64,000 nt of DNA from Dimorphilus gyrociliatus (Eukaryota > Animalia > Annelida), in assembly GCA_904063045.1 (NCBI GenBank), contig CAJFCJ010000006.1:3922408-3986407 (forward strand), given 5' to 3'. The notes beneath the pieces were generated by a model that did no database searches, had not been told where the DNA came from, and saw only the letters and a list, made by a program, of their open reading frames with translations. Positions 5,260-17,081 of this stretch are shown in pieces. Numbering within the stretch: position 1 is the stretch's first letter; the number at the start of each line of letters is the position of its first letter. The translations under genes were made by a program, and so were the position numbers.

Positions 5260-6646
5260 GATTAACGTTATTATGAAGTTATTTTACTCATCTAGTCTTA
5301 TCTATTACATTGTTTCATTTGTCGTCCAAGTGCAATAACAATTAGAGTGAAGAAATCTATAAAATCTACAATGATTTTATATAGATATAGATAACTAGGA
5401 AAATTATTGTTACTATACAAATTTAACCTGTAAAAATATACAAAATTTAAAATAAAAGAATGGACTATTTTCTAAATCAGCTGATAGTATTTGTTATCTT
5501 CTTATCTATTTGGTAACAAGAGAACAAAAGCTTTTATAGATTTTTGTGGTAAGACTCATTACACTTATGACAAATGTCATAAATACTTGGCATCTTAAAA
5601 ATAGATTATAATATTTTAGAGGAACGTTTATAGGAAAAGATGAATTGTAATAGTAAATCAATTAGATGCTTTTCACATACCAAGTACATACACATTGTAT
5701 ACAGTTTGTATAAATGGTGAAATCTACAAATTATATAATAGGATATTGTTAATTAATCATTTCTCATTTAAATATGAGTTATCCTCCATACAAACTTACA
5801 ATTTGATATTATTAGTATCGCTGAAAAATTGCGATAAGAAATTTTATTTATGTTTGCCTCAACCTTTTCAGTTTTAAAACAAACAACTAAAAATCGATAA
5901 CAATATATTTATCTTGCATGAGGTAATGTTATTTTTAAGGAATACTATTACAAAATATTCAGGCGATTTGGAATAAATTGACGCTTTTTATTAATTACGA
6001 TTCAATTGACTACAAACAGCTAGCTAGAAAGCTAAAGAATACCAATAATCGTTATCAAAAGGGTGTTGGTTATATATTTTATAAAATTCGAAAGAGTTTT
6101 ACCAAATATATCTCTTTGCACAATAACTAGCCTCTACTATTTCTTAATAATTATCATATAACAAATGAATATATCTGCCAAAATAATTACTGCTGTTAAA
6201 AGAAGCCTCTTTAGAGACTACTACAAAGAGAACATAAAATAAAACAAAGTCGTTACATATATCGCAAATATATAGTATAAATGGAGCATTTATCATTTCT
6301 ACAAAGCTAAAAAATGATCTATATTTCCTCTTTTCATTAATATCAATTCAATCACATAAAAAAAAATAAGATTACTATTTTTCTAATCTAAAATAAGAAG
6401 ATGTAAATTATGGCCTTGAACCTACTAAAAACAATAAAAAGAACTCTTTCTTTCAGTACTTGAATCATCATCATTTGCATTTATTTTACATATATAATAT
6501 ATCTCTAGAAAAAATATTGCCATAAAGATCAATTTGTTTAAGCTATAACAAAAAAAATAATGTCACCATTAACTAGATTAATACCTTTACAGCATTGTAC
6601 AAAATATGGATGGAGTGGTTTTTTTTATTAGTGTTTTTATTTATTA

Positions 6647-7561
<915 letters not shown>

Positions 7562-8941: not shown

Positions 8942-11900
8942 ATGAACTTTAAATCAGAAGATAGATCTCCATCGTCTAATACTTATTTACCATCTAATTC
9001 TCTTTCCGGTTTAAGATGCATGTAATGTATTCTTTATCTTTATATTAGTGGATTCTTATTTTATTTTTTTTTCTATATTTAGACGAATTCCTGACGATTT
9101 GAAAAGTTCTTCTAGCGATAATTCGCTAAGGAGGTATTGAATATTTTCAAACAAACTACATGTATTACCTATATGACTATCTGTTTTTGCGTTTAAAAGA
9201 AAATCAAGAAACATTTCCGAAAAGAAAAGAAGAGATCAGTTCAATTTATTAATTAATGAATTATGGCAAATGGTTTCTTCGAACGGAGAGAAAATGGATA
9301 AAGTATCTATACTGAAAGCTGCTATTGATAGGATCAAAGAACACGGTGGTAATACTCTTTAATAGACAATAGATTCTCCATATACCCTTTTTCCGCGTAC
9401 TTTTTTTAAAAGACGAATCGAAAACATTAAAGGATGATCAATTCAATGAAGAATTAAAGCCGTTCTTCTTCACTGATGTCGAATTCTCCCGATTTATGAT
9501 GGAAGTAAAGATTTTATTTTATATATACTTTTTTTTTTACATGAAAACTTAAATAATATTAAGTAACCATTAATACTTTAATAAGTTTAGTGTTATCCAT
9601 GTTATATCCCCTTATACTTAATATAAATAAAGGCTCTGGACGCAATATTTTTGGTCCTCGATAAATCTGGAACTATTCTTTACGTTTCCCGAACTATTTT
9701 TGGATTATTAGGTTTTGCACAGGTAAGTAATTAGGTTGACAACTTAAAAATATGACTAAACACTTTCATACAGAGTGAAATTGAAAATAAATCGGTTTAC
9801 GATTATATCCATCCCAGCGACTGCAAGAAATTATACGATTTGCTAAATCTGGATGACATTACACTGTACAAGGAGACAGGTTATATTAATTTAATAAAAG
9901 AATAGTAAATAGAAAGGGAGAGTTAAAAAAGATTAAAACTTATTGAGAAAATTGATCAAATGTATATTTAATGAATCTGACGTTTGTTTCTACTTTGCTT
10001 TTATGATAGTCGGATAACAATCCCCGCTTCCATCATTTTCTTAGATCATTAATTGATTTTTTTCTTTCGCTCTGACCAGAGAAGAATCAGAAGAATCAAT
10101 TATGTGTAGAGCTACATATGAAGAGGAGAGATAATGACTACTTTAACGACAAACCCGTATTCCAATTGGTTAGGATTAGCGGTAATTTCCGGCAATACAA
10201 CCCATTTCGTTAGTAATCTATTACAATAAGTATAATTATCATTATTTTTCATTAAAAAATTAATGCCATTTTATAATCGAAATAGTTTTCTGGGCAATCA
10301 GGCCTACACTCCTATTAGTAGATCGCACAGTTAAGAAAATCCCTAAGGGTTTTTTCACTAAGATTGACTAGGGCGACGTCTTGTGGCGTCGTAATTTTTT
10401 TTCATTCTATGCTTCCCTCTAGAAAGAGAAGATGCGATTTTATAAAGTTGGTCCTTTACTGTTTTTAACCTTCTTTATTATCTTAGGTTGGTAATTAATA
10501 ATTGAATTCTCTTATCAACTCTCTCTTTGAAGTATAGCTACAAAGAGAATATGCAAATATAATATCGAAGGCATATTTATATAAAAGAAAACAATAATAT
10601 ATCTTACTTAGGCCTAATCAAGAAGCGCTTTAAGTCGGAACAATTTGATATTCTGCCAATATCCAATGCATCCTTAGATAATAAATTCGACTGTATCAAG
10701 ACGCCTTTAAAATTCTCTATATGTGTCTATGAAGCATCTCGAGATAAATATATCTCAGCATCCCTTAGAGGTACTGGAGTGTGGGAGAAACGTATGAGCA
10801 AGCGTCTACTTAAAGCTTTGTCCTTCAAGAAGAATTCGATTTTAATAGATATTGGAGCCAATATTGGATATTTTACATTATTGGCAGCTAATTTTGGTCA
10901 CAATGTTATTGCAGTGGAGCCAAATCTAGAAAGTGCTAGGAGGTTAAGCGTCTCAGTTGCGTTAAACGGGTTCCACTCGAACGTGACCATCGTTCGGAAT
11001 GCTCTATTTGATAGAATATGCAGGGCGGAAATGACTAGAAACGATGATAATCAAGGTGGAATTTGGATTAAGCGCTGTACCCCGAAAGGAGACGTAAGAA
11101 CAACCTTCCTACAGCATTTATCCGCAATTGTTAGTCCTTCTCAAGTTGGTGTCCTCAAATTAGATGTTGAGGGTTTTGAGTGCAGAGTCTTAGAAAGGTC
11201 AGAAGGATTTTTGAAAACACCTTATATATTCATGGAATGGAATAAAATGTTTATCAAACGGAACCTTTACTCGACTCCTTGCACCGAAGTTCAAATACAA
11301 GCAATGGTTCATACCCTCCTACAAAAAGGATACGTTGCACATGATATCGACAGCGGTACACAACTCGATAATTCTATCTCAGATCGATGGAACTTTCATG
11401 ACATCTATTGGAGATTAAAAGGGATGAAAGAGCTATAAAAATTGCCAGCTAAAAGCTCTGTCTAAGACGAAATAGCGGCTTAAGTTGTAGCTGTCTTGCT
11501 CTTTTTATTCAAATAGTAATCATTTAGGATCTACGAAAAAAATGAGTCCACCATTGGTAGCCTATTTCCAAATCGTAATGCTATTTTGCTCGAGGCCTGA
11601 TAAAACCCAGGATTACTAATAATGTGTTTATAGTAAAGCCAAATTGTTTTGAAATTAATAGGTAACCAAAAGTCGTATCAGGATCCGATAAATCCTTCTG
11701 ATATTAACGAAGAGAGATATTTCAGCTGTAGTATTCGGTTATTAAACGCTACTACTCTAAGAGAATTGGGAGTAGTAGATGAAAAAAATAACGAATTTTC
11801 AACTAGATATAATTTAGAATGGAAGTTTTTATACATCGATCAGAGGTAAACTAGAAATTATTCTCCTAATTTAACTTGAACTTAATTCGAAACAGATGTT

Positions 11901-13146: not shown

Positions 13147-13613
13147 TCATGTATCAGATTTCTCTTCAGTTTCTGCTTGTTTTGCTGCTAAATTTGCAGC
13201 TTCATCTGTTGCTTGTTTTGCTGCTAGTTTTGCAGCTTCATCTGTTGCTTCCTTGTTTTTCTTTTGCTGAAGTTCAACAAAAGTGGCAATCATCTTTTGA
13301 TTGCCGGCCACGAATTTGCTACTGCAGGATTCCACACACATTTTCTATTGAAAAGAAACACATGAAAATTCCATCTACAGTTGAAAGAAAAGTAATATTT
13401 ATTACCTCATCCTCATTCAATCCAATACTATTAAAACACTTTGCACATCTTTGGAAACATTGTTCTGTAATACGATTATAAGTTTGAAGCATGTCCTTGA
13501 GCTGTTGAGCGATAATGTAATAACTTTATCTTTAAATTGAAAATTATTATATTAAAATATACATTTGAAATATTGCTTTCGTTTACTGGAACACCACCAA
13601 GTGACGCTGACAT
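13147..13613 (-). CDS. TIMM10B: Mitochondrial small Tim chaperone Tim10B/Tim9b (3 exons)
   Basis: Hand-spliced sequence MSASLGGVPVNESNISN-LKDMLQTYNRITEQCFQRC..LNEDE-KMCVESCSSKFVAGNQKMIATFVELQ has the twin CX3C motif and a Tim10B-like YNRxTExCFQRC. Only the last exon is in the ORF track. Confidence 0.85.
13175..13250. repeat. 36-bp tandem duplication (2 copies plus partial) in the TIMM10B tail
   Basis: gcttgttttgctgctaaatttgcagcttcatctgtt (13175-13210) and gcttgttttgctgctagttttgcagcttcatctgtt (13211-13246); encodes ATDEAAKLAAKQ / ATDEAANLAAKQ. Confidence 0.9.
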
Positions 13614-14017: not shown

Positions 14018-15903
14018 ATGGAGGAAAAAGACAAAGGAGAAGATGAACAATTTGAGAGGGATTTGAAAAATATGCTAAAGGATGGTTAGTACCACTTAAC
14101 GCTGACTCAAATTATCTTATTAAAATATTATATATATTTAACAATTGATATTTAGTGGTATTATCTACTGATTCATTATCACTAACATTCTAATTATTCT
14201 TGTTAAAGTAGGGCCTTCTATAAGTCCAACTGCTGACACTGTTCAAGGCGATTTATCAACTTCCACAAATCCTATGTCTATGCCTTCGACTAGTGTTCCG
14301 AGATCTGCCTCAGGTCCAATTCAAGGAAGATTACCTGGTATTAAAATATTTTTCCTTAAAATATGAATAGTCATGTCATCGATTTGTCTAATTATTAGAT
14401 GCAGCATCCGTTCCTCATTCACCGTCTGTAAACGGACACAGTTCATCTGTTACACAGCTTAACTTAAATTCCTCATCCAAGTTGGATGCAATAAAAGACT
14501 GGTCAATTAGTACATTTAAATGCACAAAACAACTTATTTCGGAGAAATTTGGAAACAGTTCAAGAACCGTGGATGTTGAATTAGAGAGTCAAATTGAAGT
14601 TCTTCGAGATACACAAAGAAGGTAAGTTTTTGGAAAATTTAAACTAAACTTGAATAGAGAGATTTTATTCCTTAAATACATTTACCAGATATTCCAATTT
14701 ACTGAGATTGGCTAGGTTATTGGCTAATCAATTGTCTGGTGTTTTTACAACCCAAAGAGTCATGAGTGAAGCATTTAGCGATTTGGCCCAAAAATCTTTG
14801 GAACTACAAGAAGAATTTGCCTCCAATTCTGAAACTCAAAAGAACCTAGCCAAAAGTGGAGAATCTTTAATAGGAGCTCTGAATTTCTTCATTTCGGGCA
14901 TTAATACCTTAACACATAAAACGATGGAGGATACGTTGCAAACAATTCGAAATTATGAGACAGCCAGGTAATTTATATTGAGAAAAAAAAATTCATATTC
15001 ATCTTTTTAACATTAACATGTTGTATTTAGAGTTGAATATGATGCCTACCGGTTAGATGTTGAGTCGCTTCAGCTTCGTCCAAGAGATGCAACTACGATG
15101 CAAAAACTCAAGGAGGCTGAAAATAAACATGCTTATCACAAAGCAAAATTTGAGCGTTTAAGAGGGGATGTTTCGATCAAGATGAGATTTCTTGATGAGA
15201 ATAGAGTAAGTTTTATATAAGGATAGCAATTTGAAAATGATATGTACTTCAAAAAAATTACTTACCGTATATTAAAAAAAAATGTAAAGAATGTCGGTGT
15301 TAAAAACATTTTACATCCAGCCAAAGGAACAATTTATTCTTTAAAAGCTTTTAGCTTTTTATGTTTTATTTCAAAAAATTTTAATTCTTTGGGGTAGAGC
15401 ATTTATTATTTTTTGTTGGCACAGTACCAGGTATCTGTGCGACAGTTACGACACCTGCAATCATCAATGGCTTCTTGGGTCGGTTCTAATGCCGATGCGG
15501 TGTGTCCAACACCTCCTCACACAAGGTTGTGTTTCGTTGTTTGTAATGGCTGGCGCTATCCCTCTACATTATTTTATTAGGAGAAAGATTTTTTGATTTT
15601 ATTAGTGCATGGGACGCGAATCTTGGGTTTAATTTTCAGCGATTAATTAGATTTTCGTTTAGAAATTGATAATTTTAGCAGTTATTATGTTGCAACTTCT
15701 ATAATTACAAAATAGTAACTAAAGAATTATTATTTTTTTTCTTACAGGTTAAAGTAATGCAAAAACAGTTGCTACTGTTTCACAACGCTGTCTCTCATTA
15801 CCATACTGGAAATGTGGTAGCATTGGAAAAGACAATGAAACAATTTAGTATAAAATTAAAAACTCCCAATTCTTCAAATCCCTCTTGGTTAGAACAATCT
15901 TGA
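14018..15903 (+). CDS. ARFIP2: Arfaptin (AH/BAR domain)
   Basis: [57 protein letters not shown], and C-terminal [34 protein letters not shown]1 versus ARFIP2 cannot be separated in an invertebrate. Confidence 0.92.
15425..15525 (+). CDS. Candidate alternative (duplicated) arfaptin exon inside the 542-nt last intron
   Basis: Polypyrimidine tract plus cag acceptor at 15424, phase 0. Open frame [33 protein letters not shown] aligns without gaps to [26 protein letters not shown]. Candidate donor AAG|gttgtg at 15525; otherwise the frame reads through to TAG at 15578-15580. Confidence 0.65.
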
Positions 15904-17081
15904 AGCGATGAGAATAGAAATAAAATCATAAGATTTTTCTATAAAATATAGGCAGATGGGTAATTAAAAAAAAAAACTAACAAACAAATCTATTAAGTTA
16001 TTTTCTTCATCTCTGTTTCTCTATTTTTCTTCTTTTTACTATCTTCTTATTTGTTCCTTTATTTTCTTTTTGTTTCTTCTTGAAGTGCATGCTTTACTGC
16101 TTTAGATTGTTTGTGATGCTTGATGACGTATCTGGTTTTTAAGTCTTCCTAATGGACTTTTTAAAATATTTCATTAGTACAATACTAAATGTGTCTGTTA
16201 TACAAGTATTTATGTTCAGTATAATTTATATTTTTTTTCTGAATTAATTGCTATGCTTGTCTCTAAAATTAATCAACCTGAAAAAAAAAATTCTGTTACC
16301 TTGCTAGTCTTAACGTTTTCACATTCCATATATACAGTTTATATACAGTTGATTCTTGTGTTTCGTTTTGTGACCGTCATTTTTTTAATAAGGTCAATTG
16401 TATTATAGTACAAATATTTATTTACCGGGATGGGAATAACAATAATAAATACAATTCGGTTTGAAAGATAACAGTATTTTTATGATATGTTGAAAATTTC
16501 CGTTTATTTTCTAATAAGGATATATTATATGTATTACTTTATAATTAATTCTCACCTCTACGATCCCTACTGCTATTTCATGCTAAATTATTAACAGCTT
16601 CTCATATAAAGGAAAGGTTTTCCAGTACATATTTTAAGGGAAATTATAAACAAAGCCTGCCCTATTTTTTCCATTAGAAATGTAGCTAAATTGTCGTTTG
16701 GCAAAAGACGTAGCTTTGGTTGAAAGACAACATAACTAATGGCGTTCTATCTTTACATTACCACTTTTTCTCCCTTATTACAGCATCTTCAATGCGAAAA
16801 AGTAGCCAAATTAAGACCTTAGTTACATGGAAAATCTAAACGTGAACATATCAGCTCAGGATACAAGATTAGAGAATAAGTGTATAAAAAAAAATACATT
16901 TATGGTTTATAAATAGCAAAGATCTATACAACTAAAAAAAACTCTTTATTATTGAATTTCTGAGAAAAAGAGAAGAAAAAAATTGATGTGTTTTTTCTCA
17001 TTTAAATATTCTTTATAAAATCTATCACCATTAAAAAAATATCTATCCTGCTCCCCTGCCCCTGTGCAATCTTTTGAAGAT

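What the first reader, a model, noticed from the sequence alone, without database searches (positions are those of the whole stretch)
15425..15580. Hidden duplicated exon in arfaptin that swaps the last BAR-domain helix
Seen: the 542-nt last intron (15206-15747) contains a GC-richer island with a good acceptor at 15424 and an open phase-0 frame absent from the ORF track. [26 protein letters not shown] aligns without gaps to the canonical [26 protein letters not shown] (shared V, QL, N, A and hydrophobic pattern). Using donor AAG|gttgtg (15525) into the last exon gives ..PTPPHTRLK*, echoing the canonical IKLK, with the stop in the terminal exon so no NMD is expected. Without that donor the frame ends at TAG 15580. 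Known: this helix is part of the arfaptin AH/BAR dimer that binds Arl1/Arf/Rac and curved membranes. Inference: tandem exon duplication yields a second arfaptin isoform with altered dimer or GTPase specificity. I do not know whether this has been described.
Basis: partly seen in the sequence, partly recalled or inferred. Interest (0 to 1): 0.7.

Follow-up and report, generated by a model that had tools for sequence, protein, structure and literature searches.

The report
Hidden conserved alternative exon in arfaptin
The last intron of the arfaptin gene of the tiny marine worm Dimorphilus gyrociliatus holds an unannotated short exon, almost unchanged in a related worm and paralleled in other spiralian animals, that would give this membrane-bending protein a different end; it is a well-supported new example of a known kind of alternative splicing, not yet seen in RNA of this species.

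Summary
The gene is arfaptin of Dimorphilus gyrociliatus; its annotated 341-aa product uses only the canonical last exon.

The island at 15425-15542 in the last intron behaves as a conserved alternative coding exon:
- **Conservation in a close relative (contig L020).** Constitutive exons are 82-94% identical, synonymous sites about 65% different and introns unalignable. The island is 97% identical and 39 of 39 codons encode the same residues. All three in-frame changes are synonymous, and a 1-nt indel breaks the frame right after 15542. Both flanks (15394-15424, 15543-15680) are conserved like exons.
- **Same intron in other spiralians.** Capitella, Lineus (RefSeq isoform X6), contig L005 and an unnamed spiralian carry a last-exon-like alternative exon there.
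- **Similarity to the canonical helix.** It is weak but in register (third of 27,180 open 26-mers in the window).

A single origin of these exons is neither shown nor rejected. It is a new member of a known kind.

The parts
15031..15205 (+). Penultimate constitutive arfaptin exon (ends ...FLDENR, phase 0), upstream splice partner of both last-exon choices
   Evidence: Pfam PF06456 positions 144-203, E 2.7e-15. Matches residues of DgyrCDS5199. 83% nt identity and 96.6% aa identity to L020.
15206..15747 (+). Last intron (542 nt) that holds the alternative exon
   Evidence: gtaagt donor and cttacag acceptor. Its 5' part (15206-15393) and 3' part (15681-15747) are only 54% and 49% identical to L020, which means unconstrained.
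15394..15424 (+). Conserved upstream flank: polypyrimidine tract and acceptor (cacag; catag in the relative)
   Evidence: 87% identical to L020, against about 50% for other intron sequence. Resembles the tract before the canonical exon.
15425..15542 (+). Alternative cassette exon. 118 nt (39 codons plus 1 nt) if donor T|gtaatg is used; 101 nt (ending at 15525) if donor AAG|gttgtg is used.
   Evidence: 39 of 39 residues and 114 of 118 nt identical in L020. The three in-frame changes (15427, 15445, 15514) are all synonymous, and a 1-nt indel follows directly after 15542. Single copy in the genome. In-register similarity to arfaptin last-exon helices.
15543..15680 (+). Conserved downstream intronic flank, probably splicing-regulatory
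   Evidence: 83% (15543-15600) and 79% (15601-15680) identical to L020, with small indels and no conserved frame.
15748..15903 (+). Canonical last exon: end of BAR helix 3 plus the conserved ...PSWLEQ tail. It becomes mostly 3'UTR when the alternative exon is included.
   Evidence: Matches human arfaptin-2 chain 1i49_A residues 174-223, E 1.5e-15. Pfam PF06456 positions 204-228. AATAAA at 15919.
15750..15757 (+). Stop codons reached by the alternative isoform: TAA 15750-15752 (phase 1, donor 15542) or TAA 15755-15757 (phase 2, donor 15525)
   Evidence: Read directly from the sequence. In L020 the corresponding stops are TAA and TGA, so both are kept.
15413..15445 (+). Possible small hairpin enclosing the alternative acceptor (inference only)
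   Evidence: RNAalifold finds a 14-bp stem. The three substitutions in it (15422, 15427, 15445) all keep pairing through one-sided changes. The region as a whole folds no better than shuffles.

Best explanation
Bases 15425-15542 (or 15425-15525) are a real, evolutionarily maintained alternative cassette exon of the Dimorphilus gyrociliatus arfaptin gene.

How it works. The exon is entered in phase 0 after ...FLDENR. Its first 26 or so codons are a diverged copy of the start of the last exon, which encodes the C-terminal part of BAR helix 3. Its length is not a multiple of three, so the canonical last exon is then read out of frame and translation stops after one to three codons. The stop lies in the terminal exon, so the usual exon-junction rule for nonsense-mediated decay does not apply.

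The product. It would be an arfaptin whose last 51 residues (the end of helix 3 and the conserved PSWLEQ tail) are replaced by about 36-40 different residues: a helix-like stretch, then a Pro-rich break and a short hydrophobic, Cys-containing end.

Shown versus inferred.
- Shown: conservation of the exon, its frame and its flanks, and the homologous architecture, including transcripts, in other spiralians.
- Inferred: inclusion of the exon in Dimorphilus mRNA, the choice of donor, and any change in dimerisation, membrane binding or GTPase binding.
For: 1. The gene is arfaptin. Four exons match PF06456, and the spliced product equals DgyrCDS5199 of D. gyrociliatus, which is annotated with the canonical end only.

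2. Comparison with a close relative (contig L020).
- Constitutive exons have pS 0.65 and pN 0.03; introns are 45-57% identical.
- The island is 97% identical with pN 0. Only three synonymous differences are seen where 19 are expected at the constitutive rate (p about 8e-10).
- The chance that all three changes are synonymous is about 0.016.
- The frame is lost exactly after codon 39, and both flanks are 79-87% identical.

3. The same intron holds a last-exon-like alternative exon elsewhere.
- Capitella teleta: L019 2510-2638.
- Lineus longissimus: L021 8304-8423, used by RefSeq isoform X6.
- Contig L005: 7197-7368.

4. Transcript evidence in another spiralian. P0159 (alternative) and P0228 (canonical) share residues 1-311. 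mRNA contigs L017 and L018 carry a 130-nt alternative exon followed directly by the canonical exon read out of frame.

5. In-register similarity of the candidate. p is 2e-5 against the Lineus alternative exon and 8e-5 to 2e-3 against canonical helices. It ranks third of 27,180 open 26-mers in the window.

6. A model of P0159 keeps helix 3 running through the alternative residues. It superposes on arfaptin-2 (1i49, Z 19.2, rmsd 2.1 A, model residues 140-336).

7. Codon-position G+C of the candidate is 0.59, 0.56 and 0.41, lowest at the third position, as in coding sequence of this A+T-rich genome.
Against:
- Both candidate donors are weak (gttgtg; gtaatg, which is gttatt in the relative).
- Similarity to arfaptin helices is invisible to Pfam, the PDB search and a small HMM.
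- Synonymous sites are far more conserved than coding alone requires. Some of the constraint is therefore at the DNA or RNA level, and a purely non-coding element would also be conserved.
- Only three substitutions carry the synonymous-only argument.
- Unlike the alternative exons of the other species, the Dimorphilus one breaks the helix after about 26 residues (C-P-T-P-P).
- A search of 1.84 billion representative proteins with the L005 exon found nothing.
Confidence: 0.8

Rival explanations
1. A conserved non-coding element. The block 15394-15680 would be an intronic regulatory sequence (a splicing or transcriptional element, or an unknown RNA) that is never translated, and its open frame and likeness to the helix would be coincidence.
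For: Synonymous sites are almost invariant (pS 0.10 against 0.65 in real exons). Conservation runs about 140 nt past the open frame. Pfam, PDB and the HMM give no significant match.
Against: - All three in-frame substitutions are synonymous, and the first indel falls exactly where the proposed exon ends.
- The in-register similarity ranks third of 27,180.
- The block sits where Capitella, Lineus, L005 and the P0159 organism have a coding alternative exon.
- No Rfam family matches and folding is no better than shuffles on either strand.
Confidence: 0.09
2. A regulatory, effectively unproductive exon. It is spliced in, but its role would be to lower the amount of canonical arfaptin by making a truncated, unstable or inactive product rather than a working second isoform.
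For: - Very high nucleotide and flank conservation resembles the conserved regulatory cassette exons of splicing-factor genes (established knowledge).
- The Dimorphilus peptide breaks the helix early and lacks the conserved tail.
- Peptide similarity among alternative exons of different phyla is low.
Against: - In every species examined the stop lies in the terminal exon or within a few bases of the last junction, so the standard decay trigger is avoided.
- The protein sequence is fully conserved between the two dinophilids.
- The alternative exons of the other species keep a helix-3-like pattern, and the P0159 model stays helical.
Confidence: 0.08
3. An alternative terminal exon. The exon would not be spliced onward, the frame would run to TAG 15578-15580 and the transcript would be polyadenylated inside the intron.
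For: An open frame of 51 codons exists. In Capitella, Lineus and L005 the alternative exon carries its own stop.
Against: - A 1-nt indel in L020 shifts the frame after codon 39, so residues 40-51 are not conserved.
- None of the nine poly(A)-signal hexamers searched (AATAAA, ATTAAA and seven variants) occurs between 15500 and 15833.
- The mRNA L017 shows onward splicing in another species.
Confidence: 0.02
4. A chance open frame in a G+C-richer patch of the intron, with no function.
For: Identity to the canonical exon is only 5 of 26. With free offsets the best local score is not significant (p 0.13).
Against: The patch is 97% identical in a relative whose introns are otherwise unalignable. 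The probability of no non-synonymous change at the neutral rate is negligible.
Confidence: 0.01

Closest known systems
Lineus longissimus arfaptin-2-like isoform X6 (XP_064636025.1, P0232), a RefSeq model
   Same: An alternative exon in the last intron, entered in phase 0 after ...FLEENK, replaces the end of helix 3 and removes the PSWLEQ tail.
   Different: The Lineus exon is much closer to its own canonical exon (19 of 26 identical; Pfam Arfaptin E 0.0011) and carries its own TGA. The Dimorphilus exon is far more diverged and relies on a frame shift into the last exon.
P0159 and P0228, alternative and canonical arfaptin isoforms of an unnamed spiralian (mRNA contigs L017, L018)
   Same: A cassette exon whose length leaves one extra base (130 nt; 118 nt here if donor 15542 is used) is followed by the canonical last exon out of frame, with a stop a few codons in.
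   Different: Its peptide keeps a longer helix-3-like sequence (43 codons) and is clearly orthologous to the L005 exon (tree support 95/98) but not demonstrably to the Dimorphilus one.
Tandem duplicated exon substitution events, that is mutually exclusive homologous exons (reviewed in PMC9741552, PMC8373072, PMC9013439)
   Same: A homologous neighbouring exon swaps one structural segment of the protein while the rest stays the same.
   Different: - Here the two exons are not mutually exclusive in the mRNA: the alternative one pre-empts the terminal exon by ending translation.
- The two exons differ in length and end phase.
- Arfaptin and ARFIP are not mentioned in the main text of PMC9741552.
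Highly conserved regulatory (poison) cassette exons of splicing-factor genes (established knowledge, not tested here)
   Same: Near-invariant synonymous sites and conserved flanking intron around an alternative cassette exon that brings an early stop.
   Different: The stop here lies in the last exon, so the usual decay trigger is absent, and the peptide is homologous to a structural helix.

Membership tests
Arfaptin gene (AH/BAR domain, Pfam PF06456) | Exons match the Arfaptin domain model | tested here: met
   Four exons hit PF06456 positions 7-47, 56-142, 144-203 and 204-228.
Arfaptin gene (AH/BAR domain, Pfam PF06456) | Product equals or resembles known arfaptins | tested here: met
   The exon translations match the corresponding residues of DgyrCDS5199 of D. 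gyrociliatus. The last exon aligns to human arfaptin-2 1i49, E 1.5e-15.
Alternative exon derived from tandem exon duplication | Lies next to the parent exon, on the same strand, with the same acceptor phase | tested here: met
   It sits in the intron directly upstream of the last exon, and both are entered in phase 0.
Alternative exon derived from tandem exon duplication | Significant sequence similarity to the parent exon | tested here: inconclusive
   In-register p is 2e-3 against its own canonical exon and 8e-5 to 1e-3 against others; it ranks third of 27,180; nt identity is 32 of 78 (p 0.0015). Pfam and PDB find nothing, and the HMM gives E 1.4.
Alternative exon derived from tandem exon duplication | Frame-preserving conservation in relatives | tested here: met
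   39 of 39 residues are identical in L020, only synonymous changes occur, and the frame is lost right after the exon.
Alternative exon derived from tandem exon duplication | Junction-spanning transcripts in this species | not testable with these tools
Alternative exon derived from tandem exon duplication | Equivalent exon transcribed in other species | tested here: met
   mRNA contigs L017 and L018 encode P0159. Lineus isoform X6 also uses such an exon, but that is a RefSeq model and its RNA support was not seen here.
Classical mutually exclusive exon pair | Exactly one of the two exons is present in each mRNA, and the two have equal length and phase | tested here: not met
   The orthologous-type mRNA L017 carries both exons in tandem. 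Here the exon is 118 or 101 nt, against a terminal exon.
Decay-triggering poison exon | A stop more than about 50 nt upstream of the last exon junction | tested here: not met
   The stop falls at 15750-15757, inside the terminal exon. In Capitella, Lineus and L005 it lies within a few bases of the exon end.
Intronic small RNA (snoRNA, miRNA, tRNA) | A family match or an unusually stable fold | tested here: not met
   No Rfam hit reaches threshold and no tRNA is found. Fold z-scores are -0.3, -1.0 and -0.25.

The most novel reading that the evidence does not exclude
The exon would be one member of an ancient, spiralian-wide arfaptin isoform switch that has gone undescribed: a duplicated start of the last exon that pre-empts the terminal exon by ending translation. 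In dinophilids it would also be held nearly invariant at synonymous sites, because the same bases serve as an RNA-level control of its own inclusion (for example the small hairpin over its acceptor). That would make it a dual-use coding and regulatory element setting the ratio of two BAR-domain forms with different dimer cores.
Probability: 0.3. Interest if true: 0.65.

Novelty: new member of a known kind. Interest (0 to 1): 0.5.

Why it matters
Arfaptin is a conserved BAR-domain effector of Arl1, Arf and Rac at the trans-Golgi. Its helix 3 end and C-terminal tail are almost invariant from worms to humans.

A second, evolutionarily maintained form that swaps exactly this part is present in annelids, a nemertean and at least two unnamed animals that resemble spiralians (contig L005 and the P0159 organism). 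That suggests a regulated change in the central bundle of the BAR dimer, or in partner binding. No paper found here describes it, and the D. gyrociliatus and Capitella protein models retrieved here lack it.

Two practical points follow:
- A compact genome with saturated synonymous divergence to a relative lets conserved alternative exons stand out sharply from introns.
- The exon should be added to the gene model once RNA confirms it.

Tried and rejected
- **Non-coding RNA.** No Rfam hit at gathering or E-value thresholds, no tRNA, and folds of both strands no better than shuffles.
- **Long-range pairing switch** (lead from two earlier notes on other genes). Only A/T-rich inverted repeats turned up, none in the conserved block of both species.
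- **Repeat or mobile element.** The island is single copy in the 77.9-Mb assembly.
- **Direct family searches with the candidate peptide.** No arfaptin match in Pfam and no PDB hit. Pfam also misses the transcript-proven alternative exon of P0159, so this negative carries little weight.
- **Big representative search with the L005 alternative exon.** 0 hits; a 56-aa query is too short for that library.
- **Loci without such an exon.**
  - Five distinct insect-like or crustacean-like loci with a complete last intron have no last-exon-like second copy: L007, L008, L009 (L010 and L011 are near-identical copies of it), L013 and L016. Several of these introns are too short to hold one.
  - The unidentified locus L006 has none either. 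Its near-copy L003 shows neither a second copy nor the canonical last exon within the stretch held.
  - L012 and L014 are uninformative, because no canonical last exon was found within the stretch held.
- **Tree of 11 exon peptides (39 columns).** One clade of all alternative exons is neither recovered nor rejected (p-AU 0.20). Only the L005 and P0159 exons group firmly.
- **Owenia.** Its arfaptin protein (P0139) is not on record in the contig collection.
- **Joined model.** The spliced alternative isoform of Dimorphilus was never joined, searched or folded. All searches were exon by exon, by reference. The profile used the exons as separate rows under a full-length nemertean homologue.

Full report
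**What is at the site.** The exons around the finding match the Arfaptin domain model PF06456 over profile positions 7-228. Their translations match the corresponding residues of DgyrCDS5199, the 341-aa arfaptin annotated in Dimorphilus gyrociliatus. The window therefore comes from this miniature annelid; the assembly holds 77.9 Mb, and its genome paper is PMC7854359.

The gene has six coding exons. The last intron is 15206-15747 and the last exon starts at 15748. That exon aligns to the end of helix 3 and the tail of human arfaptin-2 (1i49 residues 174-223, E 1.5e-15).
- the G+C-richer island;
- the acceptor ending at 15424;
- a phase-0 open frame of 51 codons;
- 5 of 26 identities to the canonical exon;
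- a GT after 15525 that leads to R-L-K-stop in the last exon.

**Is the similarity more than chance?**
- With the register fixed at the acceptor, the BLOSUM62 score is 15 against a shuffle mean of -18 (p about 0.002).
- With free offsets it is not significant (p 0.13).
- Scored against canonical helices of other species, the candidate ranks third among 27,180 stop-free 26-mers on both strands of the window. Above it are the true exon and a T-rich 3'UTR artefact.
- Nucleotide identity over the first 78 nt is 32 of 78 (p about 0.0015), and the tracts before the two acceptors resemble each other.
- Pfam, the PDB sequence search and a small HMM of other alternative exons do not detect it. Pfam also fails on an alternative exon that is proven in mRNA.

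The likeness is real but weak. On its own it would not carry the claim.

**The decisive comparison.** A cluster look-up of the Dimorphilus protein gave an exon fragment (P0226). Its genomic contig L020 (7.1 kb, Logan assembly of a public run) comes from a close, unnamed relative. Between the two genomes:

| Region | Identity or divergence |
|---|---|
| Constitutive arfaptin exons | 82-94% nt identity; pS 0.65; pN 0.03 |
| Introns | 45-57% identity, effectively unalignable |
| 15425-15542 | 114 of 118 nt identical; 39 of 39 codons encode the same residues |
| Upstream flank 15394-15424 | 87% |
| Downstream flank 15543-15600 | 83% |
| Downstream flank 15601-15680 | 79% |
| Rest of the last intron | about 50% |

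- The only in-frame differences in the island (15427, 15445, 15514) are synonymous third-position changes.
- A 1-nt indel directly after 15542 destroys the rest of the 51-codon frame.
- Three synonymous differences are seen where 19 would be expected at the constitutive rate (p about 8e-10). No non-synonymous change is seen.

This is the usual signature of a regulated alternative exon. It also shows that part of the constraint acts on the nucleotide sequence itself.

**The same thing in other animals.**
- *Contig L005.* This metagenome-collection contig holds a second last-exon-like exon at 7197-7368, after a strong acceptor. It lies between the penultimate exon (6396-6569) and the canonical last exon (10611-).
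- *Unnamed spiralian.* P0159 and P0228 are identical over residues 1-311 and differ only at the end. P0228 is canonical; P0159 ends in an alternative peptide. The uninterrupted mRNA contigs L017 and L018 show a 130-nt alternative exon followed directly by the canonical last exon. That exon is read out of frame, with a stop five codons later.
- *Lineus longissimus.* RefSeq isoform X6 uses an alternative exon at L021 8304-8423, inside the last intron and 2.5 kb upstream of the canonical exon.
- *Capitella teleta.* The last intron holds an unannotated exon of the same kind at L019 2510-2638.
- *Stop position.* In all these species the stop lies at the very end of the alternative exon or just inside the terminal exon.
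- *No such exon.* None was found in five distinct insect-like or crustacean-like loci with a complete last intron (L007, L008, L009, L013, L016), nor in the unidentified locus L006.

**One origin or several?**
- The L005 and P0159 exons are each other's nearest relatives (score 72, against 44-46 to their own canonical exons; tree support 95/98). That pair predates the split of those two animals.
- The Lineus exon is closest to its own canonical exon.
- The Dimorphilus exon is closest to the Lineus alternative exon (9 of 26 identical, p 2e-5).
- Arg replaces the canonical Lys before Q-L in four of the five lineages; Capitella keeps K-Q-L.
- Leu replaces the canonical Phe at helix position 11 in four of the five; Lineus keeps Phe.
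- A tree with all alternative exons in one clade is not rejected (p-AU 0.20), but it is not recovered either.

**How it most likely works.**
- *Inclusion.* It joins ...FLDENR to the alternative peptide (window:15425-15541:+).
- *Donor T|gtaatg after 15542.* The exon has 39 codons plus one base, the same end phase as the 130-nt exon in L017, and ends with Cys then TAA 15750-15752. In the relative it ends with Arg then TAA.
- *Donor AAG|gttgtg after 15525.* This donor is conserved in both species and gives ...R-L-K then TAA 15755-15757 (TGA in the relative).
- *Which donor.* I slightly favour 15542. The donor sequence is better, the phase matches L017, similar gtaat donors follow the Capitella and L005 exons, and conservation without indels stops exactly there. 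Only RNA can decide.
- *Not a terminal exon.* A terminal-exon reading to TAG 15580 is unlikely: the frame is not conserved and none of the nine poly(A)-signal hexamers searched lies before 15834.
- *Helix 3 in the P0159 model.* Helix 3 (276-331) continues through the alternative residues from 312, with a short break at the G-G. The model superposes on arfaptin-2 crystal structures (Z 19.2, rmsd 2.1 A, model range 140-336).
- *What changes in the protein.* The exon replaces the C-terminal part of helix 3. From general BAR topology (my knowledge, not tested here) this part packs with helix 1 in the central bundle of the dimer. All alternative forms lose the PSWLEQ tail. The Dimorphilus version is the most extreme: about 26 helix-like residues, then a C-P-T-P-P break and a short hydrophobic end.
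- *Untested.* Effects on dimer pairing, curvature sensing or binding of Arl1, Arf or Rac (background: PMC5487894) are inferences.

**Rivals.**
- *Purely non-coding conserved element.* It is hard to square with the synonymous-only changes, the indel boundary, the in-register likeness and the positional match to coding exons elsewhere. No RNA family or stable fold was found.
- *Regulatory, unproductive exon.* It remains possible given the extreme nucleotide conservation. But the stop positions consistently avoid the standard decay rule, and the peptide is fully conserved.
- *Chance.* It is excluded by the L020 comparison.

**Limits and compliance.**
- The spliced alternative isoform was never joined, searched or folded. 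All searches used single exons by reference. The profile search used the exons as separate rows under a full-length nemertean protein.
- The identities of L020, L005 and the P0159 organism are not known. The closest named relative of P0228 is Capitella, at 69%.

**Verdict.** This is a real, conserved, unannotated alternative exon of arfaptin, probably born by duplication of the start of the last exon, with counterparts in several spiralians. Full-text searches found no paper that describes it, though one RefSeq model (Lineus X6) already contains such an exon. It is a new member of a known kind.

Noticed in passing
window 15413-15445: A 14-bp hairpin can enclose the alternative acceptor AG (15423-15424). 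The three substitutions against L020 within it (15422, 15427, 15445) all keep pairing through one-sided changes. It may gate use of the exon, but the evidence is thin.
   Followed up: partly
L019 2510-2638 (Capitella teleta KB294813.1): An unannotated last-exon-like exon in the last arfaptin intron, with its own TGA followed by gtcagtaatt. The Capitella protein model retrieved here (CAPTEDRAFT_154485, P0138) has only the canonical end.
   Followed up: partly
window 13319-13492 (- strand); L012 2431-2739; L007 and L012 upstream genes: A Tim10/DDP zinc-finger-like ORF lies just upstream of arfaptin (Pfam E 2e-4, just under the cut-off). Insect-like contig L012 has KTI12 and a weak Tim10 hit upstream of arfaptin, and L007 has KTI12, so this may be old microsynteny.
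   Followed up: partly
That region aligns at about 75% nt identity.
   Followed up: no
P0227 (343 aa, Logan RNA contig of 1157 nt): A canonical-isoform arfaptin transcript that is 94% identical to the Dimorphilus protein. Its last exon differs from that of L020, so a third dinophilid lineage seems to be present in public data.
   Followed up: no
window 15971-16048: A T-rich 3'UTR stretch translates to a Leu/Phe/Ser-rich peptide that scored above the candidate in the helix scan. This is a low-complexity artefact and shows the limits of that test.
   Followed up: yes
L003 against L006 (WLWI01000828.1, WLWD01001813.1): Two near-identical contigs share the arfaptin exons. Only L006 shows the divergent last exon at 10950-11108; L003 differs downstream, so they may be haplotypes or carry an assembly difference.
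   Followed up: no
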